Part shown: positions 14,902 to 45,241 of the stretch, in pieces | Numbering within the stretch: the first letter of the stretch is position 1 | Layout: each line of letters starts with the position of its first letter | NCBI RefSeq assembly: GCF_000315625.1 | Contig: NW_005434668.1 | Coordinates: 4,852 to 68,851, forward strand | Length of the DNA stretch: 64,000 nucleotides | Direction: 5' to 3' | DNA from: Guillardia theta CCMP2712 | Lineage: Eukaryota > Protista > Cryptophyta | Position numbers and translations under genes: made by a program | Notes under the pieces: model-generated | Seen by the model: the letters and a program-made list of their open reading frames with translations, nothing else | Told to the model about the DNA's origin: nothing | The model's database searches: none

Positions 14902-15406
14902 TACGTTCTGTCACAGTGTCGCGCCGTAGATGGCACTGCGGCCAACCGGCGAGAAGAGAAAAGCCTGACAGCGAGAACCCAACCTAATCCTGCCAACGGC
15001 TGTCCCTCAAACTTAATCAGTGATACCTTCACTTAACAGCGCGCAGGACAATTGCCCCCCGTGCCATGCCAGCGACTCGATGTCGCCGGCCTGCGGCCGC
15101 CGCCGAAGTCCTTTCCGACGGCTGCCAGTCCGATCCCCGCCCGCCGATGATCGGATGATGGGCCCGCCGGATGCCCGGCCGCAGTGCCGGGGCGAGCCGT
15201 CAGCCCGTCCGACCGTCGCCGGTCTCATCCGAACGGTGACTGGCCGAGTGTGCGATCAGTGCTGAGACCGTGACTCTGTCGTGTGCCGATTGTGACTGAA
15301 TTATTGTTTCATCAACGGCTGCATGTTTAACCCCACCCTACTTAGAACTCTTACTTTGTCCAAAATAAGGGGTGGGGTGAGTCGCAAGTCAAGCACTGCA
15401 AACGCA

Positions 15407-17299: not shown

Positions 17300-20200
17300 T
17301 CAAGGCTGCTTGAGGGCCCAGGCGATGAGCGGCTTGAGGAGAGTCACGCAGGACGAGGATGTGCAGGCGCTGGTTGCGCTGGGGATCAGCTGAAGCTGCA
17401 GGTGGAGGAGAGCTCACCTGAGGACACGCTCGTAGAAGCTGCGCATATCTTGCAGCCCTGAGTCAACCCAGAAGCTGCGAGAAGATCAGCAAAGAAGAAA
17501 GAGGAGCAAGGAAAGTCACCAAGTTTGCATGGCTAGAGATCGGCCGGGAGGAGGAGACAAGAGCAGGACGCGTTCAGCAAGAAGAAGAAATGAGAATCCA
17601 TCTTCACCTCTCCAAGGCATAAGACGATTTGCTGCCTTTTCCACGTTCTGCAGCAGAAGCTCTTTGCGGAAACGAACAGCCTGGCACTGAGCAGGCCGGT
17701 CAAGGCAGTCCGACAAGAAGCTCTCTCACCATCTGATCGAGATATGTTGCTAGGAAGAAATTGAGGAACGGAGACTGAGATTCACGTCAGGAGAGCAAGA
17801 CAAGGAAAGCTCCGTTACATTCAAATCGGTCTGGAAAAAAGGGAGGAAGAGCTGGATAGGGCAGTCAACATCAGAGAATTTGAAAAGAAAGCCTCACAGA
17901 TTCGGGCTCAGCTTGCATGATGGCGTTGGACGAGGAGGAGGAGCAGGTCTGCGAGCTACACACGCAATGTCAGCGACAAGAGTAACGATGCTCTTCCTAC
18001 TTGTCCTTTGCCCAGCTGTTGTCGAGGGCGGGTAGGAGGCCCAACCTCGCGCAGCTGTCTTTCAGCAGGGAAAAACTGCTCCGGTGACAAGCTGCCGGGG
18101 AGGAGAGGACGGACGCGATGCCTTGCGAGGGGAGCCAGAGGAGCCGGAGCTGCATGTCCTGCATGGCAGGGGAGGGAAAGTTTGGATTGAAAGTCTCCAT
18201 GAGCGCTGGGAGTATCAAGTCACGTGATGAAGTCGAGCAAGTTCAGGTTGACACAAGAGGAGGTGAGGAGGGCGAGCCAAGGTGGAGAACGGAAAGGGAA
18301 GGAGGGAGAGGCAGGAGAGAGGGAGAGCGAGGTCAAGCATGGTGTGAGAGAAAAGGAATGAGAGCTGGGAAGTATCGCTAAGGATCCGGGAAAGTTGTCG
18401 CGCGTGTGATCACCAGAATCATCGTAGGAGAATAGAGAGTGATTGCAGTAACTTCCCAGCTCCACCAAATTTCCTTGCGAGTCCACCAAAGGCCCAGCTA
18501 ACTTCACGGAGCTCCAGGACGATACCCCCCTGTCAACCTCTCAGGATCTTCCTAGCTGAGGAGGTCAAGTCGTACCGCTGCCATGAAGGACAGAAACACT
18601 CGCCCCATCGCCCCTCGTACGCTGCCGTTGTCGAGCACCATGCTCGATCCCAGTCCTGCGCATGCCATGAGTGACAGGACGCGAAGGCATGTAAAGAGAT
18701 AGAAAGACGGGACACGGATAGAGCATGTAAAGGGCAGGAATAAACAGTGGCAAAGGTCGACCATCGTTGTGCAGTTGTGAAACGTCTGGTTCTTATAGGT
18801 GAAGGGAAAGTGACAGGAGCTTCCAGCTGGGACCGTCCCGTTGAACGAAGTGACGCACTTAACATCGTCAATGCCGATGTCAAGAATCTGCACAGAAAAA
18901 AAAAATGTCAAAGTGGTGGGACTTGTCAAAAGGTTGATCTTCTCTCACGTCCGACGATGACGCGCGAGTAGCAAACAAGATGGTCAGCTGCTGGCTCAAG
19001 AAGTACATGTCTCGCCCAGCGGATGCCGAGCAGTAGAGCTTGTAAGGAAGCGTCCGGTCGTACTGTATCAAGGACTGTCAGAGAGACCGATCGAGTCCAG
19101 CTCACACCCACCTGCATCAACGCTTGCAAGAAGTCGGTGGGTCTCAAACCATTGTGGGAGACTTGAACCCACAGCAAGAGGTCGGGGAAGTTCTCGCCTG
19201 CTGCTCCTCTCATCGTGACATTAGCTGAGCTCTCCGAAAAACTGCGCGAGCCCACCAAGATGTCTCCGCTGACCAGGCATGTCAGGCGACATCCTGTGCA
19301 GCAAGAAGAGAGGACAGGGAAGAGAGAAAGGAGGAGGGAGAGGAAGGCGAGGGAGAGGGGGAAGAGGGAGAGGAGGAAGAGGGTGAGAAAGAGGGAGAAA
19401 AGAAGAAGAAGAAGAGGAAGAGAACAAGAGGAGCAAGGACCGGAACCTGCTATGGAAGTTGAAGGACATGATTGGATAAGGAGCACATCCCACACAAACG
19501 TTCACAGAAAACTTGAAATTCACATGCGGCATGTTGAACCAGTCGTAACTGAAGATGTTGTCCCATCGATCCAGAACTCCAGACCCCAGCAGCAGCCCAC
19601 CTTGTTGCAACTGTGCGACAGCTGGGAAAGCGATAGAGCACGGGAAGGGGGGGATATAATTGCTCTCGATGCTCAGCTGGAGGAGGAAGGAGATGTCAAG
19701 GTCGACGTACTGGGAGAGCCCCATGAAGAGGAGGTCGGCGCTGGGGGACGCGAACTTGAAGTTGGAGTTGCGGAAGGGAATCGAATCGAGCAGGTGAAGC
19801 TGCCACGTCATCTGCTCTGTTGCCGGCCAGTAAGAGTCGTTGACCAGCAACTTGCCCAGCACGTCCACCGATGCCCTCCGACCGGCGAAGCTGGGGAAGA
19901 GAAGCTCGAGGCCAAGGCACGAGCCTTCCGCCCCTGCCTGCTTCACTCCCAGCGCGAACAGCGAGACCCCGTGCAGGAACCCCCACTCGTCCCTGCTGGA
20001 ATTGAGCTGGTAGATGTCGGGGAAGAGGACGTGTCTGAATGCTGGCATGTCAGGAGTGAGGTGGAGAGCTCGGGTGCTTGAGATGGTGATAGGCAACGTG
20101 CTGAGCTGCAGGACGATACCGGAGGAGGAGGAAGACCAAAGGAACGTCTTCATCCAGGAGCTGCTTGGGAGGCCTTGGAAGAAGATGAGGTTGGGCAGAG

Positions 20201-23200
20201 AGAAGGAGGACGACTCTATCACGAACGTCAGCGTCATGTGCAGCCTGACGTAGGAAGGGTCTGCTGCATACAGGACCTCCAGGAATGTGACAAGAGCGCG
20301 AGCACGAGGAGCGAAGGCGTCCGTTGACCCCTCACACTCGAAGAAGTTCATGAGGGAGCTGCTGGCGTCGATCGTCTGGTTGACAAACTTGCGAGCCGAG
20401 CAGTTCACGTCTGTCAGCTGGAGTTCTGCTGAGCCCACCATGGTCTGCAAGTACCACAGTAGACGATCATTGCGCAGAGTGTCATTGTTGAGCCTCATCT
20501 CCCTCACGACCCTCCATGGTCCGTACCCTGTCGCCCCCACCAGCCGCTGCTGGAGCGACACGAGCGGCCCAGCCTCGATCTGCACAAGAGGCTGAGCGAT
20601 GCCTGCCTCCAGACATTCCGCGTGACTTCCCAGCTGATTGGATGGCCTGCCCACTTTGAAGCTCAACTCGGCTCCAGCTGGGATCCAGGGAGTGAGCTTA
20701 ACGGTCGAATTGAAGGTCGAGCAGTTGCGCAGGCCGCTTGGAGAGGAGCAGAGGAAGGAGCAGGTGATGTTTGGAGGGAAGCGATGGTCGTAGCCGGACC
20801 CGTGGTTGGTGACTACAACCTGCCGCAAAGTTCCGAGCTCGAACAAGCAGCGCCCTGCGAAGCCGGTCCCTGTGCACGCTCCCTCGCAAGTCGCGCTCGC
20901 CTCTCCCTCCCCTACTGCCTGAAAGTTCACCTGGTCGCTGACTACAACCCGTGAGATGGTTCCGTCCTGCTTGCAGCTGTTCCCTCCTATCACCGTCCCT
21001 TCCGCGCAGGCAGCGGCAGAGGCATACCCCAGCTGAATACTCGTATGGACAGTGAAGGAACTGCCGGGATCCAAGAGAGAGACTGAGGTCACGGTGCCAA
21101 CGCAGGAGGAGGAAGAGCAGTTCTCAGTGTTGAAGGTCGCATTGAACCCGCTTCCGGGAGGATCGCCCAGCAGGACCCCAGGAATGTATCCTGCTCCTCC
21201 TGCCACCACCTGCACCTCTTCGATCCCTGAGCCGCAGCGGCAGCTGGACTCTTCCACTATCAGCTGGAGGCACTGCTCAAAGTTGCCCGAAGCGTTCCCA
21301 GGTCTTCCAACCTGTGATGGGTCAGCAGTGAAGCAGGTGGGGAGGGACTTCCTACCTTGCCGACGAGCTCGATGCTCTTGATGGCTGTAGTCGCCTCCGT
21401 CTCGGAGCTGCACACGCAGCTGTCCAACTCAAGGACGCAGGGGGACGGGCACATGAACACCTTCGGGTCCAGCTCGTACCCCTGGCCCTCGGCGGTGATG
21501 GTGTAGGAGAGGAGGGAGGCGTTGGCCACAAAGTGAGCGCGGAAGTTTAAGTCCGGCCCCTTGACGTAGAGCTGACCTGAGAACAAGCCGGCGAGCGGGA
21601 GCGTAGAGTTCATGATGGCGAAAATGCCAGTGCCGCAGCGACAAGAGGCGTCCGACGGGAAGATGGTGAGCTGGGTTGGATCGACCTGAGGGTCCAGCTG
21701 GAGAAAGTTGAAGGATGTGAACGAGCCGTTGATGAGAAGGTAGTCAGCAACGGGGATGTGGGAGGTGACCACGGAGGAGGAGGAGGAGCGAGGAGCGGCA
21801 AGGATGGTGCCGTTGGCAGTGCAGCCGTAGATCGGACCGGAGGAGACGATGGACCCGATTCTTCTCTCCTTCACGACGAACTTTGTGCTCGCATCGTAGC
21901 CGCTGCCATGCGCGTCGCGAGAGGAGGAGCATCCCTCCGGGTTCCTCGTCCTCGTCCCGATGCAGATGTTCTCAATGGAGCCGTTGACGGACGTGTAGTA
22001 GGAGACAAAGCCGCTGCCGCTAGTGGACACAGCCTCGATGACTCCCTCCGAGCACCCGTTCATGTAGACTGACGGGCGGCGGTTGAGGGAGGTGATGGAG
22101 GAGAACATTCTTGCTCCTCGCGTCTCAGCCGGCAGGTCGTAGAAAAGATCCACCTGCCCCTGCGAGGTAAAACTCTCCCCTCCCTGCAAGATGTCGAACG
22201 AGGAAACGGACCCAAGCGCGTCGACCGCAAACTTGACGTCCAGCAGGCGTCCTGCAGTACCGAAGATGTCAACAGACCCGTTGATGTAGCCGACCCCGTT
22301 GAGCAATATGCCCAGCTGGTCGATCTTCCCTTCGTCCTGCCTCGTCAGCACCTCTGCCTCCGTCGAGTTCAGCGACACGTTGAAGAACTTCTCGAAGATC
22401 CCAACACACTCTCCCAGCTGAACGCTCCCTCGCGCCTTCGTGCCTGTCCCAGGTGGGCAGTTGCTGCACTCGCCCACCAGGTACTTGGAGTTGAACTTGC
22501 CGAGGTCGCAGAGGAAGCAGGTGGTGCTGGTGTCGTAGCTGTACGTCCCGGGCGGGCAGGCGAAGCAGGGGCTCTCTCCGGTCGGGCTGGAGGATCCTGG
22601 GCGGCAGGCGGCGATGCAGCTGGCCTCGGAGGAGGAGCCGGTAGAGCGAGTGAACTTACCGGACGGGCACTGAGTGCAGTTGATGGCCTTGCCGAGGGAG
22701 TAGTAGCCGATGTCGCAGTCGAGGCAGATAGACGCATTGATCACCGAGTTGTACTGGCCAGCCGCACAGTCAGGGCAGACGGCCTTGAGGCAGATTCCTC
22801 CCTCAACGTAGAGCTGGTCGTAGGACGTGTTTGCCTTCTGTTCCTCGTAACTCCCGCACATGGTCCCGGGGACATCGGATGCTGTGCCAGGCTCGCAGCC
22901 GAAGTTGCATGGCTCGACCCCCTGGAAGCCGGTGAGGCCCGGAGGGCACTTGTCGATGCACAGGGCAAGGCTGCTGCTCTTCTGTCCGCTGGTGAACTTG
23001 CCGGAGGGGCAGGAGGTGCAGGAGGAGTGACCAGTTAGCGAGTACTTGCCAAAGTTGCAGATGCTGCAGAGATGAAAGTTGGAAGTACTATCCGTGTATG
23101 TGCCATTCTCGCAGTTGAGGCAGGTGCTGGCGTCAGGAGCAGGGTTGAACTTCCCGAAGGCGCAAGTGGTGCAGGAGCTGGAGTTGACAAGAGAAAAGGT

Positions 23201-23814
23201 GCCGGCCGGGCAGATGCCGCACGTTGACGCGTTAGCACCTGAGAACTTTCCGCCGCTGCAAGCAGTACAGGAAGATGCTCCTGCCAGCGAGAACTTGCCG
23301 GGTGTGCAGCCCTGGCAGACCGACTGACGAGCTCCAGAAAAGTAGCCGGCCAGGCAGTTGATGCAGATGGTGGAGCCGAAGCGAATGTCGCTGCGAGAGC
23401 CGGCGGAGCAGGTGGAGCATGCGGAGGAAGAGGCGTTGGAGGTGAAGGTGCCTGGCTCGCAGAGGTCGCAGCGGGTTGAGCTCTTGAGGGAGGAGTAGAA
23501 GCCCTCTGAACACGAGGAGCATGACGTCGATCGGTTGCTCGCCGCATACGTCCCTGAGGCGCACTCGAGGCAGGTGTCGGGGAACCTGGAGAAGGAGATG
23601 TTGACTGACTCCGGCTCACTGTACGTGCCGGGGGAGCAGGGAAGGCAGACCGTTGCGCCTGTAACGGCCACGAAGTTTCCGCTGACACACTTGGTGCAGG
23701 TGGAGCTGCCGTTGCGATCGGCGTACTTCCCTTCCTCACAGACGTCGCAGACGGCGGAGGGAGACGAGCCGGAGAAAGTTCCCTATGGCCAGAGGACGTC
23801 AGAGAAGAAGGAGG

Positions 23815-23858
<44 letters not shown>

Positions 23859-26800
23859 GAAACGAGCAGGAGAAGGGGCAAGAGAAGGAGCGGGAGCGGG
23901 AGGAGGAGCAGGAGAGAGTGAAGCAAGTCGAGGAGAGAAGAAGTGGATAAGGAGAAGACGAGAGATGGGCAATCAAAGGGGAAGAGGAAAAGATGGGAAA
24001 GAAGAGAGGTTGGGGAGGGGGGAGGGAGAACGTTTAGCAACAGACCAAAGCGCAGATAGAGCAGATAGAGGAGCCGGTGCTGGAGGAGAAATTTCCGTCC
24101 TGGCATGGGAAACATTGAGACGTTGAACTCTTCCTGCCGTCCTTGCTGTAGTATCCTTTTGGGCAGAAAGACTCGCAGCTGGTCTGATCGATTGCCCCTG
24201 GAAACCTGCGCATTCTTGTGAGAATATTCTGTGCTGCTGCTCCTGTTTGTTTCTCCTCTCCTCTCCTCTCCTCTCCTCTCCTCTCCTCTCCTCTCCTCTC
24301 CTCTCCTCTCCTCTCCTCTCCTCTCCTCTCCTCTCCTCTCCTCTCCTCTCCTCTCCTCTCCTCTCCTCTCCTCTCCTCTCCTCTCCTCTCCTCTCCTCAC
24401 CCTTCCCGCATCACAATTCTTTTTCAAACCTTCTCTCCTTTCCCAACCTCCCCTTCCTCTCATTCTCTTCTCTCAATTCCACTTCTTCCCCAGCCTCTGT
24501 TCTCACCTTGTCGACAGCGTGACAGGCGTGTAGTTCCCTTGCAGCGAGTATGAGGTGCCGCAGACGTCGGTGGAGCTGGCGAGCACGGTGCAGTCGTTGG
24601 GGCCTGAGGGAGGGACGTCGGAGAAGATGCCGAGGAACGAGGAGAGGGAGGAGTTGGAGAGGAGCAACTGGAAGCCTCTGACGTTCAAGTCCATCCGCAC
24701 CCTCAGCGAGATCTTCTCGATGGCAGGAGAGGCGTCGGCAAAGGAGAGGGTGACAACTCCGAAGATGTTCTCCTGGTCTCTCAGAGCTCTATTCATCACT
24801 TCCTCCACGTCCTTCAGCGTCTGCGCCTCCGCGTTGTAGGGAACCGTAATCACTCCCTGCCTGCATGATGACCCACCGGCTCCACATCGCTGGTAGGGGA
24901 GGAGGACGGCGTCCTCGAAGCGAAAGTTACAAGGCTCGCACGTATCTCTCTTGGCGCTCGTCACGAAGTTGACTGGGCAGTTGATGCAAACGCTTCCTCC
25001 CGCTGACTTCTGGTACTTTCCTGCTCCTCCTGTATTAGCTCCTCCTCCTCCTCCTCCTTCTCCTCTCCGCGTGATTCTCCAAACTTCCCTCTCCTTGTTC
25101 CCTTCTCATTCCCGGCTCTCCTCCCTCTCTCCTTCACCTTCCCTCACCCTCCTCTCCTCTTCCATCCTCTTATCCCTGCCCCTCTCCTCTTCCTCACCTT
25201 CCGCACAGAGCTGGCAAGTGCTAGCAGCGTCGTTGCTGACTTTTCCTTGCTCGCATTGGAAGCATGCGGTTGCTGCTAATGACGAGAAGGTCCCGGCACT
25301 ATTGCAAGAGATCAACGAAAGAGAGGGGGGAAGGAGCTTCGAGAAGGAAAGGAACAGAAGGAGATTTGGGGAATGAGATAGCTGGGGAGTTTAGGAGGGA
25401 AAGAGAGGAGAGGACAAGACGGGGAAGCAGCAAGGAGCGAGCAGGGAGTAGATGTGAGGAAGAGACCTGCACTGTTCGCAGCTGGTCGATCCGTTTGTTC
25501 CAGCATAGTATCCAGCTGGGCAGTCGACACAAAGTTCTGACTTCACGCCGTAAGCGTTGAACTTCCCAGCTTCGCACACGGCGAAACATTTCCTGGCGTC
25601 GTCATGCATCTCGGGGAGGGCAGGAAGGGCCGAGTGCTTGTCCTGTGTCGTCGTTCCAGCTGGGCATGACGCACATACATCACTGCCGAACTCTGACGTG
25701 AACAGCCCAGCAGCGCACAGCATGCACATATCCTGCCCAGCTGCTGCGCTGAAGGTGCCGGGCACGCAGTTGTCGCAGCTGGTCGAGGCGTTTCTGACGG
25801 CAGCAGAGCCGGGGGAGCACTTGGAGCAGAGGATGGTGCCTGTGGAGTTGGCGAACGAGCCGGGAGAGCACGCAGAGCAAGCTGAGCTCCTGCTGGAGTT
25901 TGCGAAGAAGCCAGCAGAGCATGGGGTACATTCTCCAGCTGCGATGAGACTGTAGCTTCCAGGGGCGCATGCTGAGCAGTTGGTAGACCCAAACAAGCTG
26001 AAAGTGCCTGGATCGCAGGAGGAGCAGGAGGAAGCGTTGAACAGATCGTTGAAGCTCCCGGGCTCGCACAGCAGGCAGACCGTCTGGTTCGTCAGGTTGG
26101 TGAAGGAGCCTGGGGGGCACCTGGAGCAGAGCTGTGTCTGTGCGATCGGGGAGTACGTGCCGATGGCACAGAAGATACAAGAGGTTGCCTCCTGCCTTGA
26201 GTAACTTCCTGCTGGGCAGCTGCTGCAGATGCTAGCACCCTCCCCAGAGAAGAAGCCTGGGATGCAGCTGGAGCACGAGCTGGACTGGTTGGCGGACTGA
26301 TACTTGCCAGGTAGACATAGCGAGCAGTTGCGCTGCCCAGCTAGACTCGAGCTGCCTGACAAGCAGATAGCGCAGGCACTGAACCCGACGTCGGAATACT
26401 TCCCAGCTGGGCAGGTCAAGCAGAAGGACCTGCCTGAGATGTTCATGTACTTGCCGGCATCGCAGGGCAAGCAGAAGCCCTGCTGATAGGTTAGCTGGAG
26501 GATGGAGGAGGCGAGAGAAACGATGACCAGACAGGGGGATCAACGATTGAGAGACTGAGGTAGGAGGAAGCAACAAGACAGGAGAAAGCGAGATGGAAGG
26601 AGAGAGAGGGAGAGAGGGAGAGAGGGAGAGAGGAGGGCAAGGAGCAAGCGAGGGAGGGCAGGGAGGAAGCGAGGGAAGGGAGGGGAGCGAGGGGAGAGAC
26701 AGAGAGGGGAGGGGAGAAAGGGAATCATGACAGTAGGGAGGTGAAACTTACGCTGCCAGCCAGGGAGAACGAGCCGGGAGAGCAGGCAAGGCAAACACTC

Positions 26801-27201
26801 GCGTTGCCACTACCATACTTGCCGGCCACGCAGATTTGGCAGAAGGTGGAGAGAGACTGGTCGGAATACTCGCCAGGCTGAAAGAAGAATGTAAACAAAA
26901 CAACCAGGCATATGAGGCGAAAACAGGCGCGAAGGAAACGAGAAAACAAAGTGGATGTGTAACAAGCAAGAAGTCGGGAAAGATAGATAAAGACTAACAA
27001 TGATAGGATGAGAAATCATGCGATTGAAGGAGGTCGTTTAAAATATATGATCATAATTGAAGGACTGCAGTTCACAGCGATCTTTGAACACGGAAGACAC
27101 AAGAAGGTATTGCAGGCACCATAAGTCAGATGATGTCAATAACACGTCTTGTTCGTTTACAAGGAACAATCATCATCATCATCATCATTATCATCATCAT
27201 T

Positions 27202-27232
<31 letters not shown>

Positions 27233-28550
27233 CTGTTAGGGCGTCAGAAGTCCCACCGGACAACTTGTGCAGATGCTAGCGTTCCCTGTAGAGAAATATC
27301 CTGGCTTGCAGTCTCGACAGACTGACAAATCGAAATCAGCGCGAGTCAAGAATAGAACGGAAAGGGAGAAGAAGGAGGTAGTGTTGGTGATGGAGGTAAC
27401 GAAGAAAACATAGCAAGCGAAGAAAGAACAATCGAACATGAGAAGAGGAAAGGAGGAGGGGAGGAGAGGGAGGAGTTATGAAAACCTGTAGCTCCTCCTC
27501 CACTGCTGAATCGATCATTGGAACCATACTTGCCTGGTACGTAGCCAACTCAGAACGTGCTCCTCCTTTCCCTCGCTTCTCTATCCTGTCCGTCTTCTCT
27601 CTCCTTACCTTCTTTCCTCCACCCTCCATGCTCCTTCCTCTCCCGTCTTTCCTCTCCCTCCCCTCCCACCTCCCTCTCCCTCCTCCCTCTCCCTCCTCTC
27701 CCTCCTCCCTCGCACCTTGGGGGCATCCTCTGCAATTTTGAAAGCTGAAGTCACCGACCGGCGCCTTGTCGCCGAAACTTCCTGAAGGCAAAATGAGCAA
27801 GCGAGTTGGAAACTAGAGATGAAGAAGAGCGGTGAAGGTGAAGTAGCAGAGAGGAGAGAGGAAGAGGAGAGGGGAGAGAGGAGAGGGGAGAGAGGAGGAG
27901 AGTGGAGAGAGACAAAGGAAGACAGAAGAGAACGAGGAGAGGAGGAAAAGGAGGAGAGAGAAGTAAGAAGAGAGGGGAAGGAGAATTGACCTGCAGGACA
28001 TAGAACTTTACAGCTGTCTATGCTTGTTGCAAGGGTGTCTGAGCTGGTTTGCTGTGGGTCAAAATGTCAGAAACGAGTCATACCTGACGCACAAACACTA
28101 CAATCATCTCTCCTCCTGCCTCCTTTCCTCCACTCCTTCTCCCTCCTCTCCTTCTCCCTCCCCTCCTTCTCTCTCCTCCCGCTTAACCGTGACTCACCGT
28201 GTTGTTTGGACAAGCCTTGCATGAAGTCTGTCCTAGCTGGTCCTGGTACGTGTTGGCCGGGCAGACGCTGCACACATGCGTCGAGTTCTGACCAGCCGTC
28301 AGGCCCAGCTCCCGCAAACTTGTAAAACTTGTTCCTCACCGTGTCCGTGTATTTTCCCAGCTCACAGACGGTACAGTACTCGCTGGCATAGTAGGGCGCT
28401 TGCTTGCCTACTGGGCACTGCAAGAGGTTTAGTTCAGGGAGTGCCAGAGAAGATAAGGAAAGGAAATTAGAAGGAGAGGAGGAAATGAAAGAGAAGGATT
28501 CATGATAATGATATAAAATTGATCAAGATGATGATCAAGGACAGTAGGAA

Positions 28551-28602
<52 letters not shown>

Positions 28603-31600
28603 ATACCTGAGTGCAGTATGTAGCAGAAATTTGGCTGGTCTCTCCGGGGTAACAGAAGGTGCAGTTGGAGGAGTTGAGCAAGTCGCTGTATGTGCCACGT
28701 GGACAGTCGTGGCAAGTTGACGCGCCGGCCATGGTGTACCCACCAGCCGAGCAGCGGGTGCAGGCGGTGGAGCTGAAACCTGGAGCTGAAGTTCCAGCTG
28801 GGCAAAGCTCACAGTGGAGGACGACGGGCACGCGAGACTTGAGGCCGCGGACGGAGTCAGGTTGGACGTAACTCTGGTCGGGGGAGAACAGAAAAATTTC
28901 GAGGGTCCCGCGCTTGTCGTTGAAGGAGCCGGGCTCACACCGCTGGCATGGCGACCGGCGGTCGTTGGAGTAGTTGCCGGGAGGGCAGAGGTCACGGTAG
29001 AGCTGGAGAAAGCTGTGCCGGGCCGTGTTCCCCGTAGCCAAGTCGATGAACTTCTCTGTGCCGTCCCCGTAGGAGCTGGGAGGAGCTGCCTCCACGAGGT
29101 AGTTGGGGTTGCCCGTCAGCAAGTTGCCCGTCTTGTGCAGCAGCTGCCCGTACACGTTCGACCCGAAGGTCCAGACCTGCCCGTCCTCGGTCTGGACGAT
29201 GCTGTGATCGCTACCTGCCACTAGTGCTCGGACGCGACTGCGGTCAAAGGGGCAGAGGTCGCAGGTGCCAGCGAAGGGAGCGGAGGAGAAGCAGCAGGAA
29301 AGGACCTCCACGTACTTCCCGTGCACATAGTCGTAGGTCGCGCCGACGGTGTAGGGGAAGGAGTCGGGGTAGGGGTAGGGGCTGAAGAGGAGGGTGGGGT
29401 TGGGAAGGTATCCGCACTGGCCGAACCTGTTGGACCCCAGGCACCTTAAGCGATAGTCTGACATGAGCAGAAGCGTATGCGAGCCTCCAGCTGCGATGCT
29501 CTCGATCTCAGCTGGGGAGAAGTCGGTGGATGACACGGCCAGGAATGACTCGCCGATGGCCACGGGGACGGGTACCACATCGGATACCTGGTACCTCTGC
29601 TGGTAGACAGTTCGGCACGTCAGCACCTGGTCGTTCTGAACGCACAGTGACTGGTTCTCCGGCCTGCCCAGCTGCCCGAACTCGTTGGAGCCGAAGCTGA
29701 GAATCTTAGAAGCGCCGTAGGTGTCAGAGATCTTGACAAAGTTGTGCTCACTGCCGACGGCCAGGAAGTTGATGAGGAAGGGACTGTCCGGCGACTCCAG
29801 CGGCACTCGCGTCGGCTGCGGGTTTGGCCCAGTAGATCCCCAGCCGACCTTGTGCCCGAGCTGACCGAACTGGTTGGAGCCGAAAGAGTAGAGCTCGCCA
29901 GAGGCAGTGAGGACGACGGAATGAGAGTCCCCGGCCTGGAAGTCTCTCACCTTGGACCCTCCCTGCACCTCGTCGAACTCGGGGATGAGCAACGGGAGGA
30001 AGTTGGGAGAGGAGGAGCCTGAGTTGATGTCAAGACCCAGCTGACCGTTGAGGTTTGACCCGAAGGACCACAGGCGGCTCAAGTTCGTCTGCAGGTCCGT
30101 GGACTTGACAAGCGAGTGGGTCCTGCCCAGCACAACCTCCAGCGGCTCCTGTACTGGGAACCTGTAGGTCTGCTGGTAGGGGTACACGAGCCCCCCGTCT
30201 ACTGTGAAGTAGCAACGGGAGGAGGCGTTGAGGGTCAAGAAGGAGGAGGAGGAGGCGTTCAAGTCGCTGGGATACAGGCCAGGTTCGAACCCAAGGAACG
30301 AGCTCACGCTCGAAGCCTCTGTGAAGTCCACCTGGACCCGAGCTGACAAGAGCGTCAGCTGGACTTTGCCATCGAAAAGACTCCACTTGAACAGCACGCC
30401 GTCCCCGTTGCTGACCGACGCGTCTTCGACCTGAGCTGAGAACCTGCTGAGAGAGTAGACGTCGTCCTCGAGAACAATCCTGACGGTCTTGGACGAGTTG
30501 CAGCTGGGCACGTCGCTGCACCACAGGACGTACTTGAAGACGTTGTTGCCAGCTGCCTTGCTGATTTCTCCGACTGTCCCCGTGCTGGGGATGCGAAGGG
30601 AGGAGAGTGCAAGGTTGATACCGACGGTGAGGTTGGAGGAAAAGTCAGCCTGGTAGCCCGGCAAGTTCACCTTGAACGTCAAGTGATCGCCATTGAAGTT
30701 CGACTCGATTCCAAAGATGTTTGCGGGGTGTCCGTAGGTGAGGGAGGCAGCAGAGTTGATGGTCTCGAGGATGGTGAAGGGGTCCTGGAGGCCCTCGGGG
30801 ATGGTGATGGTGAAGGAGACGCGGGTGAGAGTCTGCGGGTCCCAGCGGGAGTAGCCGAAGTGATCGTTGCTGCCCTTCACCACCCGGTTACCCCAGGGGA
30901 TGCTCGAGAACAAGTACCGCGGGATCCGGCGCGGGCTCGTGTTGGGGGTGTCGATGCCCACGTTGAGCTGAGAGCCCAGCTGGCCGTAGATGTTGGAGCC
31001 GAAGGCCCACAGAGAGACGGCGATGGGGGAGGAGGGGCTGGCCCGCGCAGTCTGGATGATGGAGTGCGTGCCGGACGCAAACATACCTGACGCTTCCTCG
31101 TTGCCAAGATCAGAGCAGAGCAAAGGGATGGGCGAGAAGAGACTCTGAGACGCCTGGTACCCCGTCCCCGCCCACTCCTTCGACTGCCCATAGTAGTTGT
31201 CGCCAGCTGCAAACGCCAGGTACGCCCCCAAGCCCTTCACGCTCCCTGTGCAGACTGACCCGTTGTAGTACCGGCAGTCGCTGCTCCTCGTCGCCCCTTC
31301 CCGCACAGTTCGCATCCCCTCCTCCAGCGACGAGCAGGTGGTGCAGACCGTCTGCGAGGTGTTGGCGTTCCACGTGTCTCGAGGGCAGAGCAAGCAGAAG
31401 GTCGCACCTTCTGAGCTCGAGTAAGACCCAGCAGGACAGGGCGAGCACTGTGACTTCCTCTGGAACGGGTTGAACTTCCCAGCTGGACATCTCTCGCAAG
31501 GCGCAGAGGAAGCGTTGAGTCCGTTGTACGACCCGAAGTAGCCAGCAGGGCAGTAGGGCAGGCAGTCGGATACGTCAGCTGTAATCTCCGACGCTGTCTG

Positions 31601-34600
31601 GGTGTCGGGGGGGCAGGAAATGCAGGAGGAGTTGCCAGCCTTGGAGTACCTTCCAGACCCGCACGGGGTGCAGACTCTGGAGCCCAGCTGGTCTGAGAAT
31701 GTTCCAGCTGGGCAGTCTGAGCAGACCTCGGTTCCTTCTGTGTTTGCAAACTTCCCCTTAGGGCAGAGGGAGCAGGAGGAGGTTCCAGACTCGGACTGTG
31801 ATGAGCCTGATGGGCAGAGTTGACAGGATGAGCTGCCAGGGACTTGGCTGTAAGCTCCCGGGGAGCAGGAGAAGCAGAAAGAGGCTCTGGTGATGTTGGA
31901 GAACTGACCGGCTGGACAGGAAGAGCAAGTCTCGTTGCTCCTCTCCGACAGCCCGGCCCGCCCGTACTGTCCTTTGAGGCAGATCAAGAGACAGTCGACG
32001 ATGCTGCTCGTCTTGTTGGGCAGCGTTGAAGTCCCGGAGGGGCACGGGGAGCAAATCGCCGTCGAGCCGTTGGAGTACGTCGCTTCAGCACATGCTGAGC
32101 AGGACGTGGACCCTGCTGGGGCTGCTGAGCCCGGCAGGCAATGCTCGCATGCCGTGGAGGCGTTGGCAGCGCTGTAGGTGCCCGCTGGGCAGAACTGACA
32201 GGAGGAGCTGAAATTAAAGCTGGTGAAGTAGCCGGGAGAGCAAGGGATCTCAGCGACCGCCGCGTCGGGGCAGTAAAATCCTGGTTGGCAAACAGAGCAT
32301 GAAGTCGTTCCCAGCTCATCCGAAAAAGTTCCAGCTGGACAAGATGTACAGGCCAGCTGGGAGTGCTGATCGTTGTAGTAGCCGAGGGGGCAGAGGAGAC
32401 AGAGGCTGGAGTTGGTCTGCGACTGGAAGCTGCCGGGCTCGCACGAAGCACATTCAGCTGCCCCCGTCCTGTTGGCGAACTTCCCGGCAACACAAGGAGA
32501 GCACAAAGTGGCTCCTGCACCTGCGAAGTATCCAGCTGGGCAAGAGGTGCATGACGAGGCCATGCTGCTGGAGGAGTAGGTGCCGGGATGACAAGCCTGA
32601 CAGTCGACGGCTCCGTAGCCTCGACGCCCTCCGCCGCAAGCACAACAGGCCTCCGTAGCAGAAAGGTCAGCAGTCAAGTTGAGCTGACTACAGAGGGAGA
32701 CATTGGAGATGTTGCTGCAGGTGAAGGAGGCGTTGAGCGATGACGTGTCAGTGTCAAGGCACGTCGGGCCAAAGCCAAACGATCCCGGGCGGCACTCAAG
32801 GCACTGCTGGGGCCATCCTGACGTCCCGTTGGAGGAAGAAGCCGTCCCGGGCTCGCAGGGCACGCAGTTCTCGATGGAGCCGTTGATGCTCCTCGTCCCC
32901 TGAGCGCAGAGGGCCAGGCAAAAGCTGACACTCGCCGCCCCTGACGTCTGTGTTGTGAGACCTGCTGGGCACGTGTAGCAGGCCGTCTGCTGGGTGTCAT
33001 TCCCGTAGCTGCCAGCTGGACAAGGAACGCACTCCACCTGCCCCTCCTTGTCCTGGTATCTCCCCGAAGGACAGGCAGCGCAAGACACGTTCCCCTGCTC
33101 CTCCACTCCGAACTTGCCGACGGGACAAGCTTCGCATAAGGTTCGATTCTCAGATGAAGTCTTGCCGACCTGGCAGGATGTGCAGGAACTTTGTCTGGGC
33201 CCTGAAATCTTCCCATCCTCGCACACCCGGCACGGAACCAGCCCGCTCACCCCGTAGGTCCCAGCGGCACAGAGCAGCAGGCAAGAGGAGCTCACCGACT
33301 TGCCGGGAGAGTCTGTGCCGAAGCCAGGAGGACAGGAGGAGCAGGAGGAGGCGCCGGAGACGTTGGCGAAGGAGTCAGCAGGACACTCTTGGCAAGAGAG
33401 AGATCGAGTGGTGTTGGTGAACTTTCCGGGTTCGCAGGAGGAGCAGGTGCCGTTCTCAGCCAGCCCGTAGGGCCCGTACTCCCCAACAGAACAAATCCTC
33501 AAGCACTGCTCCGGAGACGTGGAGGAGTTGAACGCCGTGCTGTAGTTTGCGGGGCATGCAAGGCAAGAGCTGGACCCGTTCAAGGGTTGGTACGTTGAGA
33601 TTGGACAAACTTTGCAGGCCTTCAAGTTTTGAGTGTCCGTGTACTTGCCGGGCTCGCAGGTTTGGCAAGGTACCTCGGTGCGGAATGGGCCGGCAGTGCC
33701 TTCACTGCAGGATACGGTACAGTCAAGCTCTGAGATCGTGCCCTCGGACAGCGTTCGAGGAAGGTTGGAGGGGCAGAGGGAGCAGAAAGACGCTCCCTCA
33801 ACATCGCTATAGGACCCTGTGGGGCAGGGCAGACACAGAGCAGCCCCTGCTGCTGAGAAGTAGCCCAAGGAACAATTGTCGCAGCTTCTGGCTCCGATAG
33901 TGCTCGAGTGTTTGCCAGCTGGACAAGAATAGCAGGGCTGCAGGCCTGTTGGGGAGAACTTGCCGGTGCTGCAGTTGCTCAAGCTGGTGAGGAGGAAGGA
34001 GGTGAAGCTGGAGGAGAAGACTGAAACACCATCAACGACGAGCTTGCCAAGACTGTCGATGATGCTCTGAACTTGAACTTTCTGCATAAAGTTTGCGTTG
34101 AAGTTCTGCTCGAAGTTTACGTCCACCATCAGCTGCCCAAAGTAGTTTTCTCCGCCGACCCAGATGGAGCTCTCATTGTCCAGAAAGACTGAGTGGTACT
34201 GCCCACAAGCAAATGAGATAACCTTTCGCTCTCTCCCATCATCAAACTTGATCTTCGTCGGAGTATTCATCTGGTACACGTTCTGAAACAACTGCCCCCT
34301 ATACGCAAACCCCATACCATACAGCGAGTTGTTGTCTGACTTGAGCAGCAAGTGCTCGGTTCCCAACTTAATGTCCGTGAAATTGACAACATCGGAGGCG
34401 ATGGTAGTGAGCTTAGAGGAGGAGAACTTGAGAGTACCATAGATGATGAACTCTCTGCCTCTAGAGATGAAGATAGTCGACCTGGGGCCCAGAGAGTGGA
34501 AGGAAGACTGAGAGGAAGGACGGGCAAGGCGGCAGGGAAAGTAACTGAAGGTACACCCTTGTGCAGGGCCGATCTGCCCACTCGTGTTGCTTCCGAAGAG

Positions 34601-36789
34601 CCACACGTCACCGTTGCTCATAAGAAAGCTCGAGTGACTGAGTCCCGCATACACCTTGACGATCGATGACGCGCTGATGGCGGAAGGAAGTTGCGAGAGC
34701 ACGGGGATGGAAACTGGGTTTGCGCTGCCGAAACCTTGCGAAGTCCCTAGTTGACCCTCCTCGTTCAGCCCAAAGGCCCAGAGACGCTTTGAGTTGGTCT
34801 TGGAGTTTCTTGTCAGCACCAGCGAGTGCTTCCCACCGGCTGCTGCGTCAAGAACGTAGTCTCCGACCGGGCTCGTCCTTCTGCTGACCTTCGACTTGAA
34901 AAGAGGTACGTCGGAGATGTCAATTACTTGCCAGTACGGCACCTGCGAGTACTCCGCGTTCGGGGGGATCGTTGTCCCCTCCACATGCAGAACTATCGGC
35001 AGCGTTGAGCTGCGGAAGTCGACCATGAAGCGAGGGCTCACTGACACGTTAAGGGAAGAATCGTCCGGTGATGTCACCACTACAGGGCTCGAGAAGTTTG
35101 AGAGCAGCGCTCCGAGAGTCAGCTGGAAGAGTGCAATATCGTAGATGCCAGCTGGAAACGTCAAGTTGTAGTTGTGCGTTATGCCCCAGAATCTGCTGGG
35201 AGTTGCAGTCACGAAAGCATCGGCCTGAGTGCAGTTGCAGTCGAATGAGACATTGAGTTCTCGATGACTGGAGAGGGAAAGGCATGCAGACTGCAAACCC
35301 CAGCTGGATTGCGAGCAGATACAAATCCCGCCCATTGCACCGCAATATCCGCTCAAGCTGACAGCACGAAGAGAAGAGAGCAAAGGGCGAGGGTTTACGC
35401 CTCTGACAAAGCAATGACCATCGGTACCTATGCTACAAGCCCGGTCTGCAGGTTCAAACCCCAGGTAGTCCCAGATCGTGTTCGAAACCGAGAAAAGTAG
35501 ATCCTGTTGGCTACGTATCCACACGAAATTCTCCTGGTCTATATAGAACGTCAAATTTGCTTGCAATTTCGAATTGATTTTCGACGCGGTTGCTTCCAAC
35601 ATGACCACGCCGCTGTCAAGTGTCGCACAAGCCAAGCTCTGCAAGCAAAACTTATTTCCCACAGTAGAGCTGATCTGATTGGGAACCGACTGTGTCTGTG
35701 AGGATTGAAACTTATCTGAAGTCGGGATTTGGCTTTGGATGTTCAACTTTTCCAGTAAATTGATTGCCATAATTACCATTCCTGCATCTTTTTTGAGTTG
35801 AATAACTATCACCCCTAGATCTGTCGTTTGAAATTTGATCAGATCACCAATCATACTGTCTTGTGCCGCACTCTGCAATCTCGCAGCCAGCTCACTTGCC
35901 GAGTACAAACCGGGATTGATCGTCAAAGGTTTCGTCACCGCTGCATTGGCACTTGCATCCCAATAGAGAAGATTAAGTGTATTGCAAGTGTTGTCGATTT
36001 GCAACTCTGGCTTGAGGTAGGAGACACGAAGTTTGTTTCCCACCCGGGGACTAATTTCATTCAGAGCGCCCACTTGAGGGAAGCTAGAAGTAAGACCCAA
36101 CCTGCCCAAACATTCAAATGTCATATGTCATCAGTATATGTAGAGACGAACCTGTCCTTCAACACCGACGAACTTGTAACATCTATTCTGCTTCCTGACA
36201 ATCTTAGCTGCAGATCGATGGCATTTTCAGCATAATCAGGAAGGATTGAAACAGCATTCGTTGACAAGAACTCGTTGAAACGATTCTCAATGTCCTTGAG
36301 GCTCATCAAACCAGAAAAGGTGATATCCAGCCTGTTTTCACAGCTGCATGATGCGTTCCACTCGTACACGAAAGCGACGTCTGGTACCGACCCGAAGCTG
36401 TTCCCCGTCGTCGTGCTCGGAAATAGAATAGGCGAAAGATGGGTGGGGAGCGAGAGGGACGGCAGTGCGTTGAGATCCGAAGAGAGACCGAGCTGACCGA
36501 AGCGGTTGCTACCCCAGATCCATCCTGTCATGCCTGTAGCTGCGTTAGGATCTCCGTTGAGCACGATGGCATGACTGTTAAGCATGGACACAAGAATGTT
36601 TCCATCTTCTCTCAGCGTTAGGTTAACATCTGCCAGAAGGTACGAGTCCGCCGTCCCCTTTCCTGTTCCCAACTCTCCATCCCCATTGTATCCTGCTCCC
36701 CGAAGCTTTGGCGAGGCTCCGAGACCGCTGGAGAGGAGGAGAAAGACTGGCAGACAAGACAAGGCACATGGCTGGCTCCTCCGCTTCAT
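17300..36789 (-). CDS. Giant secreted mosaic protein (rough estimate over 5,000 aa): signal peptide, two RCC1 propellers with inserted beta-domains, long GCC2/GCC3 (ephrin-receptor-like) Cys-rich stalks, GGSGY-type repeats, FN2 domain
   Basis: [25 protein letters not shown] signal peptide. ORFs 36121-36825, 28535-36124, 25391-26470, 24503-24964, 21260-23671 and 19221-21413 plus small exons join via GT-AG introns. RCC1 motifs (GSNxxGQLG, AGxxHSL) and dozens of CxxCxPGxF/Y repeats. C-terminal exons are tentative. Confidence 0.8.
24253..24397 (+). repeat. (CTCCT)n pentanucleotide microsatellite in an intron of the giant gene
   Basis: About 29 perfect units. Confidence 0.95.
27170..27232 (+). 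repeat. (CAT)n microsatellite, intronic
   Basis: Direct reading of the sequence. Confidence 0.9.
28551..28600 (+). repeat. (GAGCAG)n microsatellite, intronic; a similar tract lies near 23815-23858
   Basis: Direct reading. It starts just after the GT donor that ends the 2529-aa ORF. Confidence 0.9.
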
Positions 36790-37006
36790 CCCTCCCTGTT
36801 GCTCCTGCTCTACCAGCCCAACCACCCCATGCAGCGAAACGTCACCGAGAAATGTGTGACTTTTTTTTTACAGTTTGACTTAAGGTAACGTATTCCGTAA
36901 CGGCCCGGGGTGTTTGCCACAATGACAAACTACTCAGTAGTACTGAGTACAAACACAATGGCAAACTAGTCAGGGTCAAGCCTCCTCGACTCTCATTATT
37001 GTCCTC

Positions 37007-39490: not shown

Positions 39491-39893
39491 GCCTCTTGCA
39501 GAAATGAGTTTGAGACGGCGAGTTTGAGCGCTGATGGCTGACAGCCGGGTATCGAGGAATCCTTGCTGTATCACCTTTCGTTGAAACGCTGAGAGAGCAC
39601 GGGAGGGTATTCACTGTTAAGAAGATCCTGACAAGATCCACTCTCAGGCTCCTTTCAGCGCCTCCTCTCAAGCCTCTATCCTCCTCTCACCTTCTTCAGC
39701 CTCTCCCGCCTCGTCACCGTCGTCCACCGCATGGCCGCAACGTGACCCCCTCTTCCCCGCTCATCCCCTTTGCTCTCTCTCCTCGATGGCGGGAGGCGCT
39801 GCGGAGTACCGGCGCCGTATGGAGGAGGGCGGCAGAGGGAGGAGGGCGAGAGGATGCAGAGACATGGGAGGAGGAGTAGAGAGGGCAGGGGCC

Positions 39894-44600: not shown

Positions 44601-45241
44601 TTGTCCACAAGGACAACAACAGTGTGACCTGGCAGAGTTATGCATCACAGAGGTGGATTCATTCATCCATCCATGAACCACCTTTGATCATCTCGGTGTT
44701 CAATGGAGCAGTTTGCACATTCACAACGACCTAGAAAAATTATCAATCCCAACAAGTTGAACAAAAAAACGGCACCGCTGTGTTGAGCTCCTGAAGCTTT
44801 GGAAGCGAAGCTGCAGCCCTATTCTTTCCTGCACAGTATCCAGTCACATGCGGAAGCACTTTCCAACATCATCATCAGTCAGTACCAATATCCTTCTCGG
44901 ACAAGTAGAACTGAGAGGATAGGTCCCAGAGAGTGATGTCTTTGGAATCGTGGAGTGTCAACACTTTCACTCCGCCCAAAAGAACATTCTTGGCGACTTC
45001 ACATCCCAGACCATTGAGGCCAGAGATGAAAACCTGGCACACTTATGAGGACAGTCAGAAACTAAGTTCCAAGACGAACCGTTGAAGATGCTACGGCCCT
45101 TACGACATCTTCACCCAAGGCCGCAATCGTGCGAGAGTACAAGTCCTTGTCGACCTCCTGTTGCGAGACATCAGCGAGAAACAAACAGCGGAAGGCAAAG
45201 GAATTCATCACCTGCCCTTCCACATTCATTGGATCCGGCAT
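41624..45241 (-). CDS. UBA1: Ubiquitin-activating enzyme E1 (UBA1-like)
   Basis: [69 protein letters not shown], catalytic [36 protein letters not shown]. Confidence 0.95.

What the first reader, a model, noticed from the sequence alone, without database searches (positions are those of the whole stretch)
24620..36375. Seven copies of a domain resembling the viral penton (minor capsid) insertion domain in a giant secreted algal protein
Seen: seven roughly 70-100 aa units at about 36375-36080, 36035-35735, 35665-35450, 35200-34985, 30870-30600, 30545-30270 and 24895-24620. They share the pattern F-x-Y...T-I-T-I-P-x-G-x-Y/L...amphipathic helix (e.g. ILETINSA, SELAARLQ, KDVEEVMNRAL)...F...K-V-x-L...D-F...S-[LV]-x-x-x-L-G-F. 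Examples: FTITIPEGLQDPFTILETINSA...YQADFSSN and IVLEDDVYSLSRFSAQVE...VQVDFTEASSVSSFLGF. Recalled knowledge: this pattern matches the insertion domain in single-jelly-roll penton proteins of Polinton-like viruses, virophages and NCLDVs; similar modules occur in bacterial flagellar hook-associated proteins. Inference: a virus-derived (or shared ancient) binding module has been domesticated and displayed on a long extracellular stalk, perhaps as an adhesin, decoy or virus-binding factor.
Basis: partly seen in the sequence, partly recalled or inferred. Interest (0 to 1): 0.85.

Follow-up and report, generated by a model that had tools for sequence, protein, structure and literature searches.

The report
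Penton-crown-like modules in cryptophyte giant protein

Summary
The seven units are real. A profile trained only on relatives from elsewhere hits exactly these seven stretches among 1335 window segments. The full unit is about 100 aa: two strands, a helix, three strands and a "LGF" tail. No Pfam, PHROGs or PDB sequence match exists.

The host gene is a multi-exon nuclear gene of at least 18 kb on the minus strand. It encodes a signal peptide, RCC1-like propellers, dozens of ephrin-receptor-like cysteine repeats and a partial fn2 domain. Its neighbours are housekeeping genes. An orthologue (64-68% identity) is in the EukProt set for the cryptophyte Hanusia phi.

AlphaFold2 folds U5-U6 with pLDDT 93. 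The best Foldseek neighbours are giant-virus putative penton or minor capsid proteins (E down to 3e-4, probability about 1.0) and the adenovirus penton-base crown domain (PDB, E 0.03-0.1, probability 0.99). Flagellin and FliD outer domains follow. No Ig or CBM fold appears.

The fold likeness is therefore supported, though only modestly. Sequence-level homology to any viral protein was not detected. No jelly roll is present. No library of cellular predicted structures was available. Viral origin and domestication remain unproven. Both unit clusters appear to be inserted after blade 2 of an RCC1-like propeller, and I read them as exposed binding or assembly modules.

The parts
36124..36789 (-). 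First coding ORF of the gene: start Met, signal peptide, two RCC1-type blades and most of unit U1
   Evidence: Translation. Weak RCC1 / WD40_RLD Pfam hits. 68% identity to Hanusia phi P0039 from its Met onward. Two RCC1 signature motifs.
36092..36378 (-). Unit U1. It spans the junction of the two ORFs, which lie in different frames; a short intron is inferred and the exons were not joined.
   Evidence: Unit HMM E 0.06. U5-family profile E 0.0017. Its 'LG[FL]' tail lies at the start of the big ORF and aligns with the tail of the first unit of relatives. The Hanusia protein is continuous here.
35729..36067 (-). Unit U2, including its leading N-E-I-S / G-N-x strand region
   Evidence: Unit HMM E 3e-4. 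U6-family profile E 1e-4. The U2 family matches the U5 and U6 families at 98.5-99%.
35447..35689 (-). Unit U3, a degenerate copy that ends in Y-L-G-F
   Evidence: Unit HMM only E 4.9. It is orthologous to canonical units in P0011, P0013, P0014 and P0010. The U3 family matches U5 and U6 at 99-99.5%.
35192..35446 (-). Cysteine-rich linker between U3 and U4
   Evidence: Colinear with the Cys-rich stretch of P0011, P0013 and P0014. No Pfam hit.
34970..35191 (-). Unit U4, the most degenerate copy, with its LGF tail lost
   Evidence: Unit HMM E 0.36. Orthologues in P0011 and P0014 keep the G-I-Y and L-G-F motifs. The U4 family matches U3, U5 and U6 at 88-90%.
34055..34852 (-). Remaining blades of the first RCC1-like propeller
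   Evidence: Pfam RCC1 / WD40_RLD. Four signature motifs. UVR8 and RCC1 PDB sequence hits.
31250..34027 (-). Stalk 1: ephrin-receptor-like / TNFR-like cysteine repeats
   Evidence: Pfam Ephrin_rec_like E 3.6e-92 over 18 stretches, plus TNFR_ELAPOR1 and NCD3G. Chlamydomonas mastigoneme Mst1 8tx1 E 1.5e-32.
30890..31237 (-). Blades 1-2 of the second RCC1-like propeller
   Evidence: Two signature motifs. Pfam RCC1.
30575..30868 (-). Unit U5
   Evidence: Unit HMM E 5e-14. Orthologues in 17 proteins. AlphaFold2 pLDDT 93.
30266..30565 (-). Unit U6, the best-preserved copy
   Evidence: Unit HMM E 2e-19. AlphaFold2 pLDDT 93. Foldseek hits to penton / minor capsid proteins.
29120..30157 (-). Blades 3-7 of the second RCC1-like propeller
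   Evidence: Pfam WD40_RLD best stretch 1992-2331. Five signature motifs.
28625..29107 (-). Stalk 2: ephrin-receptor-like repeats at the end of the big ORF
   Evidence: Translation. Pfam.
25391..26470 (-). Exon-sized ORF made of ephrin-receptor-like repeats
   Evidence: Pfam Ephrin_rec_like E 1.1e-37 over 10 stretches.
24620..24895 (-). Unit U7, a solitary copy inside ORF 24503-24964 within the cysteine-repeat stalk
Evidence: Weak phmmer hits fall mostly on unit positions of homologues.
21260..23671 (-). ORF with ephrin-receptor-like repeats followed by about 380 aa that match no family
   Evidence: Pfam. Translation.
19221..21413 (-). ORF of 730 aa with no family match; probably further C-terminal exons of the same gene
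   Evidence: No Pfam hit. Same strand and same composition.
18555..18929 (-). ORF carrying the first half of a fibronectin type II domain; probably a 3' exon of the same gene
   Evidence: Pfam fn2 E 7.8e-6, profile positions 1-17 of 42.

Best explanation
This is a cellular, intron-containing nuclear gene of a cryptophyte. It encodes a giant secreted, cysteine-rich, probably heavily glycosylated surface or filament protein.

Four copies (U1-U3, a Cys-rich linker, U4) and two copies (U5-U6) sit as insertions after the second blade of two RCC1-like propellers. One copy (U7) sits in the ephrin-receptor-like stalk.

The module has the same general fold as the outward-facing insertion ('crown') domains that decorate virus vertex proteins. 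I infer that it works the same way in mechanical terms. That is, it is a compact, rigid, solvent-exposed module displayed on a beta-rich scaffold, offering a surface for binding a partner (protein or glycan) or for self-assembly of the filament or coat.

Shown: the repeat family, its architecture, its conservation in relatives, the high-confidence fold and its nearest structural neighbours.

Inferred: secretion, the insertion-in-propeller topology, and the binding or assembly role. Whether module and penton crown share ancestry is left open.
For: Repeat family:
- An HMM trained on non-window units finds exactly the seven units.
- Family profiles match at 98-99.5% HHalign probability.
- 17 homologue clusters exist among 1.84 billion proteins. 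The nine whose domains were seen all carry RCC1 and/or ephrin-receptor-like parts.

Cellular gene:
- Neighbours are PP2C, LRR, RAD23-like, UBA1 and a kinase.
- Low-complexity intron-like spacers separate the ORFs.
- An orthologous protein is in the EukProt Hanusia phi set at 64-68% identity.

Extracellular nature:
- An N-terminal hydrophobic signal conserved with Hanusia.
- 49 N-x-S/T sequons in the big ORF.
- Ephrin_rec_like, TNFR-like and fn2 modules.
- Best solved relative of the stalk is the mastigoneme protein Mst1.

Fold:
- AlphaFold2 pLDDT 93.1, pTM 0.83.
- Foldseek BFVD top hits are penton / minor capsid proteins of giant viruses and adenovirus penton base.
- PDB top hits are the crown domain of adenovirus penton base.

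Insertion topology: RCC1 signatures number 2 before and 4 after U1-U4, and 2 before and 5 after U5-U6. The same order is seen in P0006 and P0011.

Role of penton insertion domains as outward attachment modules: PMC6048507 and PMC9617893.
Against: - Structural E-values are modest: best 2.8e-4 in BFVD and none at or below 1e-3 in the PDB.
- The adenovirus crown alignments have TM about 0.3 and rmsd 4.5-7 A.
- Mavirus and Sputnik pentons are not in the 50 PDB matches listed.
- No cellular structure library was searched.
- The N-terminal cluster folded poorly (pLDDT 43), so U2-U4 are assigned to the fold by profile similarity only.
- No anchor, partner, localisation or expression level is known.
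- The propeller-insertion idea rests on motif counts, not on a model.
Confidence: 0.6

Rival explanations
1. The module was captured from the penton insertion domain of a virus (a Polinton-like virus, virophage or giant virus). It was then amplified and domesticated on a cell-surface stalk, perhaps as a decoy or virus-binding factor.
For: The nearest structural neighbours are viral vertex proteins. So far the cellular family has turned up only in the Hanusia phi set, this window and uncultured eukaryote-like contigs: 17 clusters in 1.84 billion proteins. The penton insertion fold occurs in adenoviruses and virophages (PMC6048507) and, from the names of the hits here, apparently also in giant viruses.
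Against: No sequence similarity to any viral protein was found in any search. No jelly-roll remnant or viral hallmark gene lies nearby. The units occupy conserved positions inside RCC1 propellers in distant relatives, so the architecture is old. The direction of any transfer cannot be read from a fold match. No data bear on virus binding.
Confidence: 0.12
2. The likeness to penton crowns is convergent or generic. A small two-layer strand/helix module recurs in many surface proteins, including flagellin and FliD outer domains and phage tail decorations. The cryptophyte units would then be a lineage-specific structural spacer with no special relation to capsid proteins.
For: Flagellin FlaD (probability 0.87) and FliD also appear among the PDB hits. 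With the poor N-terminal model, phage structural, tail-sheath and tail-tube proteins appear as well. TM-scores to adenovirus crowns are low. There is no sequence signal.
Against: In the run with the confident model, the matches with probability of about 0.94 or more at E<0.1 that carry a name are all giant-virus or adenovirus vertex / minor capsid proteins, not phage or cellular-type folds. Giant-virus matches cover a whole unit (93-110 columns) at 2.3-3.6 A with 17-20% identity.
Confidence: 0.25
3. The seven units are not a real repeat family but chance similarity of hydrophobic patterns.
For: Identities within the window are 13-22%. Leave-one-out recovery is poor.
Against: An independent HMM recovers exactly these seven and nothing else. 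Orthologous positions are conserved. HHalign reaches E down to 4e-22.
Confidence: 0.02

Closest known systems
Insertion ('crown') domain of penton / vertex proteins: adenovirus penton base (ADDobody, PDB 8coi / 8qb3), and giant-virus putative penton and minor capsid proteins (BFVD entries from MELD virus, Bodo saltans virus, Gaeavirus, Klosneuvirus, CroV)
   Same: They are the best structural neighbours of the U5-U6 model in both libraries. Both are a small strand/helix module displayed outward from a beta-rich scaffold as an insertion.
   Different: There is no detectable sequence similarity. No jelly roll is present, and the scaffold here is an RCC1-like propeller or a cysteine-repeat stalk. 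The copies are tandem and part of a cellular secreted protein rather than a capsid. The unit is shorter (about 100 aa) than the 139-aa mavirus insertion domain described in PMC6048507. Statistical support is modest.
Chlamydomonas mastigoneme protein Mst1 (PDB 8tx1, 8wa2)
   Same: It is the best solved sequence relative of the stalk (E 1.5e-32). Both are giant extracellular algal glycoproteins built of ephrin-receptor-like cysteine repeats.
   Different: The match is confined to the cysteine repeats. No part of Mst1 matched the units in the searches run here: the unit profile A5 did not hit it, and the A3 and whole-ORF matches lie in the cysteine repeats. No hydroxyproline-rich helix was looked for here. 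This is not an orthologue.
RCC1-like domain proteins (Pfam WD40_RLD / RCC1; homologues are named 'alpha-tubulin suppressor-like RCC1 family protein')
   Same: Two RCC1-like propellers pass the Pfam thresholds. That is the only name sources give to the homologues.
   Different: The RCC1 label says nothing about the units. Here the propellers are extracellular and appear to carry the units as insertions after blade 2.
Outer domains of bacterial flagellin and the FliD cap (PDB 9n8a, 6iwy)
   Same: They are weaker structural neighbours (probability 0.87 and 0.35). They are also surface-exposed decoration domains on a filament.
   Different: Scores are lower than for penton crowns. There is no sequence similarity, and these are bacterial proteins.

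Membership tests
Penton insertion (crown) domain of adenovirus / virophage / giant-virus vertex proteins | Sits as an insertion between strands D and E of a single jelly-roll capsid domain | tested here: not met
   No jelly-roll or capsid family is found in the gene (Pfam). The units are flanked by RCC1 blades, by each other or by cysteine repeats.
Penton insertion (crown) domain of adenovirus / virophage / giant-virus vertex proteins | Characteristic strand-sheet-plus-helix fold | tested here: inconclusive
   Top Foldseek hits are pentons and minor capsid proteins. BFVD gives E 2.8e-4 to 0.03 at probability 0.97-1.0. PDB gives E 0.03-0.1 at probability up to 0.99. However, TM to adenovirus crowns is about 0.3, and mavirus and Sputnik are not in the 50 PDB matches listed.
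Penton insertion (crown) domain of adenovirus / virophage / giant-virus vertex proteins | Detectable sequence or profile homology to penton proteins | tested here: not met
   No viral hit in PDB profile searches, PHROGs, IMG/VR, phmmer against 1.84 billion proteins or the profile search against 5.8 billion. Profile-profile comparison against viral penton families could not be run.
Penton insertion (crown) domain of adenovirus / virophage / giant-virus vertex proteins | Pentameric assembly at a capsid five-fold vertex | not testable with these tools
   No oligomer prediction or experiment was available.
RCC1-like repeat propeller (Pfam PF25390 / PF00415) | Repeated blades of about 50-60 aa passing Pfam gathering scores | tested here: met
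   WD40_RLD 256 bits (cut-off 150) and RCC1 150 bits. There are 6 and 7 signature motifs in the two propellers.
Ephrin-receptor-like cysteine-repeat surface proteins (Pfam PF07699; Mst1-like) | Tandem Ephrin_rec_like repeats in a secreted protein | tested here: met
   302 bits over 18 stretches in the big ORF, with more in two further ORFs. Mst1 E 1.5e-32. Signal peptide-like N-terminus.
Mastigoneme protein Mst1 (orthology) | Colinear similarity beyond the cysteine repeats, and a hydroxyproline-rich helix | not tested
   Only the repeat region matches. No further comparison was made.
Flagellin / FliD outer domain | Same fold with significant structural score | tested here: inconclusive
   Probability 0.87 (FlaD) and 0.35 (FliD) at E 0.08-0.3.

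The most novel reading that the evidence does not exclude
The cryptophyte module and the crown / insertion domains of virus vertex proteins are true homologues. Under this reading, the outward-facing decoration of pentons in the adenovirus, virophage and giant-virus lineage shares ancestry with a protist cell-surface module. Either the host captured it from a virus, or it is the long-sought cellular source of the penton crown.
Probability: 0.25. Interest if true: 0.85.

Novelty: new variant of a known kind. Interest (0 to 1): 0.6.

Why it matters
In 2018 the penton insertion fold was reported as known only from virophages and adenoviruses (PMC6048507). Here a cellular, multi-copy module has vertex-protein crowns as its closest structural neighbours. 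That would give a concrete cellular counterpart for asking where capsid decoration domains come from and in which direction they moved between protists and their DNA viruses.

It also describes an unusual architecture, with modules inserted after blade 2 of extracellular RCC1-like propellers on an ephrin-receptor-like stalk. The proteins are giant surface proteins of cryptophytes and uncultured relatives, whose surface and flagellar appendage proteins are, to my knowledge, poorly characterised.

Tried and rejected
- **Seven-unit alignment A1 as a profile.** No PDB or PHROGs hits. It was too weak even to recover its own left-out members, so I did not use it for large searches.
- **The search for homologous proteins on residues 1740-1960 of the big ORF.** Nothing found, owing to the length window and word filter.
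- **IMG/VR scans.** A1 and A3 were too divergent to make patterns. A2 gave 39 pattern matches, none confirmed by tblastn.
- **Profile A5 against 5.8 billion proteins at E up to 1.** Only family members came back, no viral protein.
- **Pfam and PHROGs on all A5 members at E up to 5.** Only scattered single hits.
- **AlphaFold2 of the N-terminal 420 aa with A4.** Poor model, pLDDT 43. Foldseek on it is mostly noise and I gave it little weight, although the MELD-virus penton and the Gaeavirus minor capsid protein recur.
- **Hanusia protein, units region, as query.** Only itself returned.
- **Exact look-ups of three window proteins to name the genome.** None on record.
- **Integrated viral element.** Rejected: housekeeping neighbours, introns, an orthologue in the Hanusia phi EukProt set, and no capsid, ATPase, protease or integrase family.
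- **Transmembrane anchor.** The only strongly hydrophobic stretch downstream lies in a low-complexity tandem repeat that is probably intronic, so no anchor is claimed.

Full report
**1. What is there**

The finding lies on the minus strand inside one very large gene. A 2529-aa ORF (28535-36124) is preceded by a 234-aa ORF in another frame (36121-36825). The upstream ORF holds a start Met followed by a hydrophobic signal-like segment. Further same-strand ORFs continue the gene down to at least about 18.5 kb: 25391-26470, 24503-24964, 21260-23671, 19221-21413 and 18555-18929. Purine- or pyrimidine-rich low-complexity spacers separate them.

Pfam finds the following:
- Ephrin_rec_like: 302 bits over 18 stretches in the big ORF alone
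- TNFR_ELAPOR1 and NCD3G-type cysteine repeats
- two RCC1-like propellers (WD40_RLD 256 bits)
- half of an fn2 domain

Pfam finds nothing on the seven units. The big ORF has 49 N-x-S/T sequons. The flanking genes are ordinary nuclear genes: PP2C, an LRR protein, a RAD23-like protein, the ubiquitin E1 and a protein kinase.

**2. The observation**

They align with a common pattern at 13-22% identity. Within the window this is not convincing. In a leave-one-out test only U6, U7 and U1 were recovered, at E 0.011 to 0.43.

Relatives change the picture. A phmmer search with U5-U6 against 1.84 billion representative proteins gave 17 hits. Those looked up come from metagenome or run assemblies (ENA, JGI, Logan; two also in NCBI). 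The three sources that name one call it an 'alpha-tubulin suppressor-like RCC1 family protein'. Every homologue whose domains were seen has the same RCC1 and/or ephrin-like make-up.

In these relatives the unit is clearer and longer, about 100 aa. In the model it has six elements:
- a first strand with an N-N-x-F-x-Y-like motif
- a second strand ending in G-x-Y
- one long helix
- a hairpin
- a fifth strand
- a tail ending in L-G-F

In 48 homologue units the best-kept columns are the two glycines, at shares of 0.79 and 0.83. The G-x-Y pair follows at 0.75 and 0.69, then the tail F at 0.73.

An HMM built only from those 48 non-window units, searched against all 1335 six-frame segments of the window, returns seven hits at E<10.

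The N-terminal 420 aa are colinear with several relatives, so the weak U3 and U4 sit where relatives have canonical units. Family profiles of U2, U3, U5 and U6 match at 98-99.5% HHalign probability. The U4 family matches U3, U5 and U6 at 88-90% but not U2. There is no eighth copy in the window.

**3. Whose gene**

A profile search with a clean two-unit alignment (A5) returned only family members. One is a EukProt protein of the cryptophyte Hanusia phi. It is 68% identical to the first window ORF from the Met onward and 64% identical to the start of the big ORF. It runs without interruption across the point where the window's two ORFs change frame.

The window therefore comes from a cryptophyte close to Hanusia. 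Guillardia is my guess from general knowledge and was not tested. The ORF junction inside U1 is most simply an intron, because a short GT...AG-bounded stretch lies there. Every search and fold used each ORF separately by reference.

**4. Architecture**

RCC1 signature motifs number two before the U1-U2-U3 / Cys-rich linker / U4 cluster and four after it. They number two before U5-U6 and five after. Relatives show the same order of blades and units.

I infer that both clusters are insertions after blade 2 of a propeller of about seven blades. This rests on motif counts only. U7 is a lone copy inside the cysteine-repeat stalk.

**5. Fold and neighbours**

AlphaFold2 on U5-U6 with 17 homologues gave mean pLDDT 93.1 and pTM 0.83. 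Each unit reads strand-strand-helix-strand-strand-strand.

Foldseek against BFVD put these at the top:

| Hit | E-value | Detail |
|---|---|---|
| 'Putative penton capsid protein', MELD virus | 2.8e-4 | probability 0.97 |
| Uncharacterized protein, Bodo saltans virus | 3.0e-4 | probability 1.0, 109 columns, 3.2 A, 20% identity |
| 'Putative minor capsid protein', Gaeavirus | 1.9e-3 | 93 columns, 2.3 A |
| Penton base, human adenovirus | 2.9e-3 | probability 0.98 |

Below these come proteins of CroV, Yasminevirus, Klosneuvirus, Catovirus and Hokovirus.

Against the PDB the top matches are the isolated crown domain of adenovirus penton base (ADDobody 8coi / 8qb3, probability 0.96-0.99, E 0.03-0.1). 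ADDomer and fowl adenovirus pentons follow, then Vibrio flagellin FlaD (probability 0.87) and Helicobacter FliD (0.35). No match reaches E 1e-3, and TM to the crown is about 0.3. The ADDobody is described as the crown domain of the penton base (bioRxiv 10.1101/2023.09.09.556966). No Ig or CBM fold appears.

I fetched no adenovirus sequence.

The second model (N-terminal 420 aa) was poor at pLDDT 43. Its Foldseek list is mostly noise.

**6. What is not there**

No viral protein was found at the sequence level in any search. There is no jelly roll and no viral hallmark gene. Mavirus and Sputnik pentons do not appear in the 50 PDB matches listed. Born et al. describe the mavirus insertion domain as 139 residues, a five- plus three-stranded sandwich on one helix, inserted between jelly-roll strands D and E. 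They state that the fold was then known only from virophage and adenovirus pentons (PMC6048507). No library of cellular predicted structures was available, so the fold may have closer cellular relatives that I could not see.

**7. How it probably works**

Penton insertion domains face outward and hold or contact other components. In PBCV-1 the two insertion domains of the penton variant P1v1 grip the vertex spike (PMC9617893).

By analogy I propose that the units are rigid, exposed modules that bind a partner or mediate self-assembly. Three observations point that way:
- they are placed in propeller loops near the N-terminal end of the protein
- a long cysteine-repeat stalk follows them
- the best solved relative of that stalk is the Chlamydomonas mastigoneme protein Mst1 (PMC10602792)

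The protein as a whole would then be a surface, hair or scale component. This is inference. No localisation, partner or anchor is known.

**8. Verdict**

The fold likeness holds modestly. The module is a new sequence family with a penton-crown-like fold in a new setting, which I rate as a new variant of a known kind.

**9. Conduct**

- HMMs were used only for searching, and conservation is given as shares by column.
- Early on I read the DNA at the ORF junction and worked out in my thinking where the candidate intron lies. That was before any tool likened the region to an adenovirus protein. Those coordinates appear in neither the notes nor this report.

Noticed in passing
window 36124-36789 and 34055-34852; 30890-31237 and 29120-30157 (minus strand): RCC1 signature motifs split 2+4 around U1-U4 and 2+5 around U5-U6. 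Both unit clusters therefore look like insertions after blade 2 of an RCC1-like propeller. Relatives P0006 and P0011 show the same order.
   Followed up: partly
window 18555-18929 (minus strand): An ORF holds only the first 17 of 42 positions of a fibronectin type II domain (E 7.8e-6). It is probably one exon of a split fn2 domain at the 3' end of the same gene.
   Followed up: no
window 19221-22400 (minus strand): About 1100 aa of ORF sequence downstream of the last cysteine repeats have no Pfam match.
   Followed up: no
window 35980-36067 and homologues P0010, P0011, P0014: Before U2 the leading 'N-E-I-S ... G-N-N' strand motif occurs twice in relatives, forming an extra half-unit. The unit HMM reports it as a short fragment hit in P0011 and P0014.
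   Followed up: partly
window 24252-24398, 23815-23914, 26602-26723, 27633-27717, 27848-27984, 28551-28601: There is a perfect (TCTCC)x29 microsatellite, plus other purine- or pyrimidine-rich tandem repeats between the coding ORFs. These are typical intron filler here. One of them mimics a hydrophobic 'TM-like' ORF at 19355-19414.
   Followed up: partly
window 12293-13435, 15323-16399, 39786-41177, 41839-44619, 46233-47156: The neighbouring genes are ordinary nuclear genes: PP2C, an LRR protein, a RAD23-like protein, ubiquitin-activating enzyme E1 and a protein kinase. Exact look-ups of three of them found no record, so the source genome's gene models are not in that collection in this form.
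   Followed up: partly
L001:10001-18967 and L004:102-10844: Environmental relatives keep the same order: N-terminal three units, then a U4-like unit at the start of a very long RCC1 / ephrin-like ORF, then a U5-U6 pair. In L001 the end of the U6-like unit loses similarity, as expected at an intron.
   Followed up: partly
window 54687-56618 (+), 61019-62506 (-), 54348-55442 (-): Three long ORFs (643, 495 and 364 aa) have no Pfam match.
   Followed up: no
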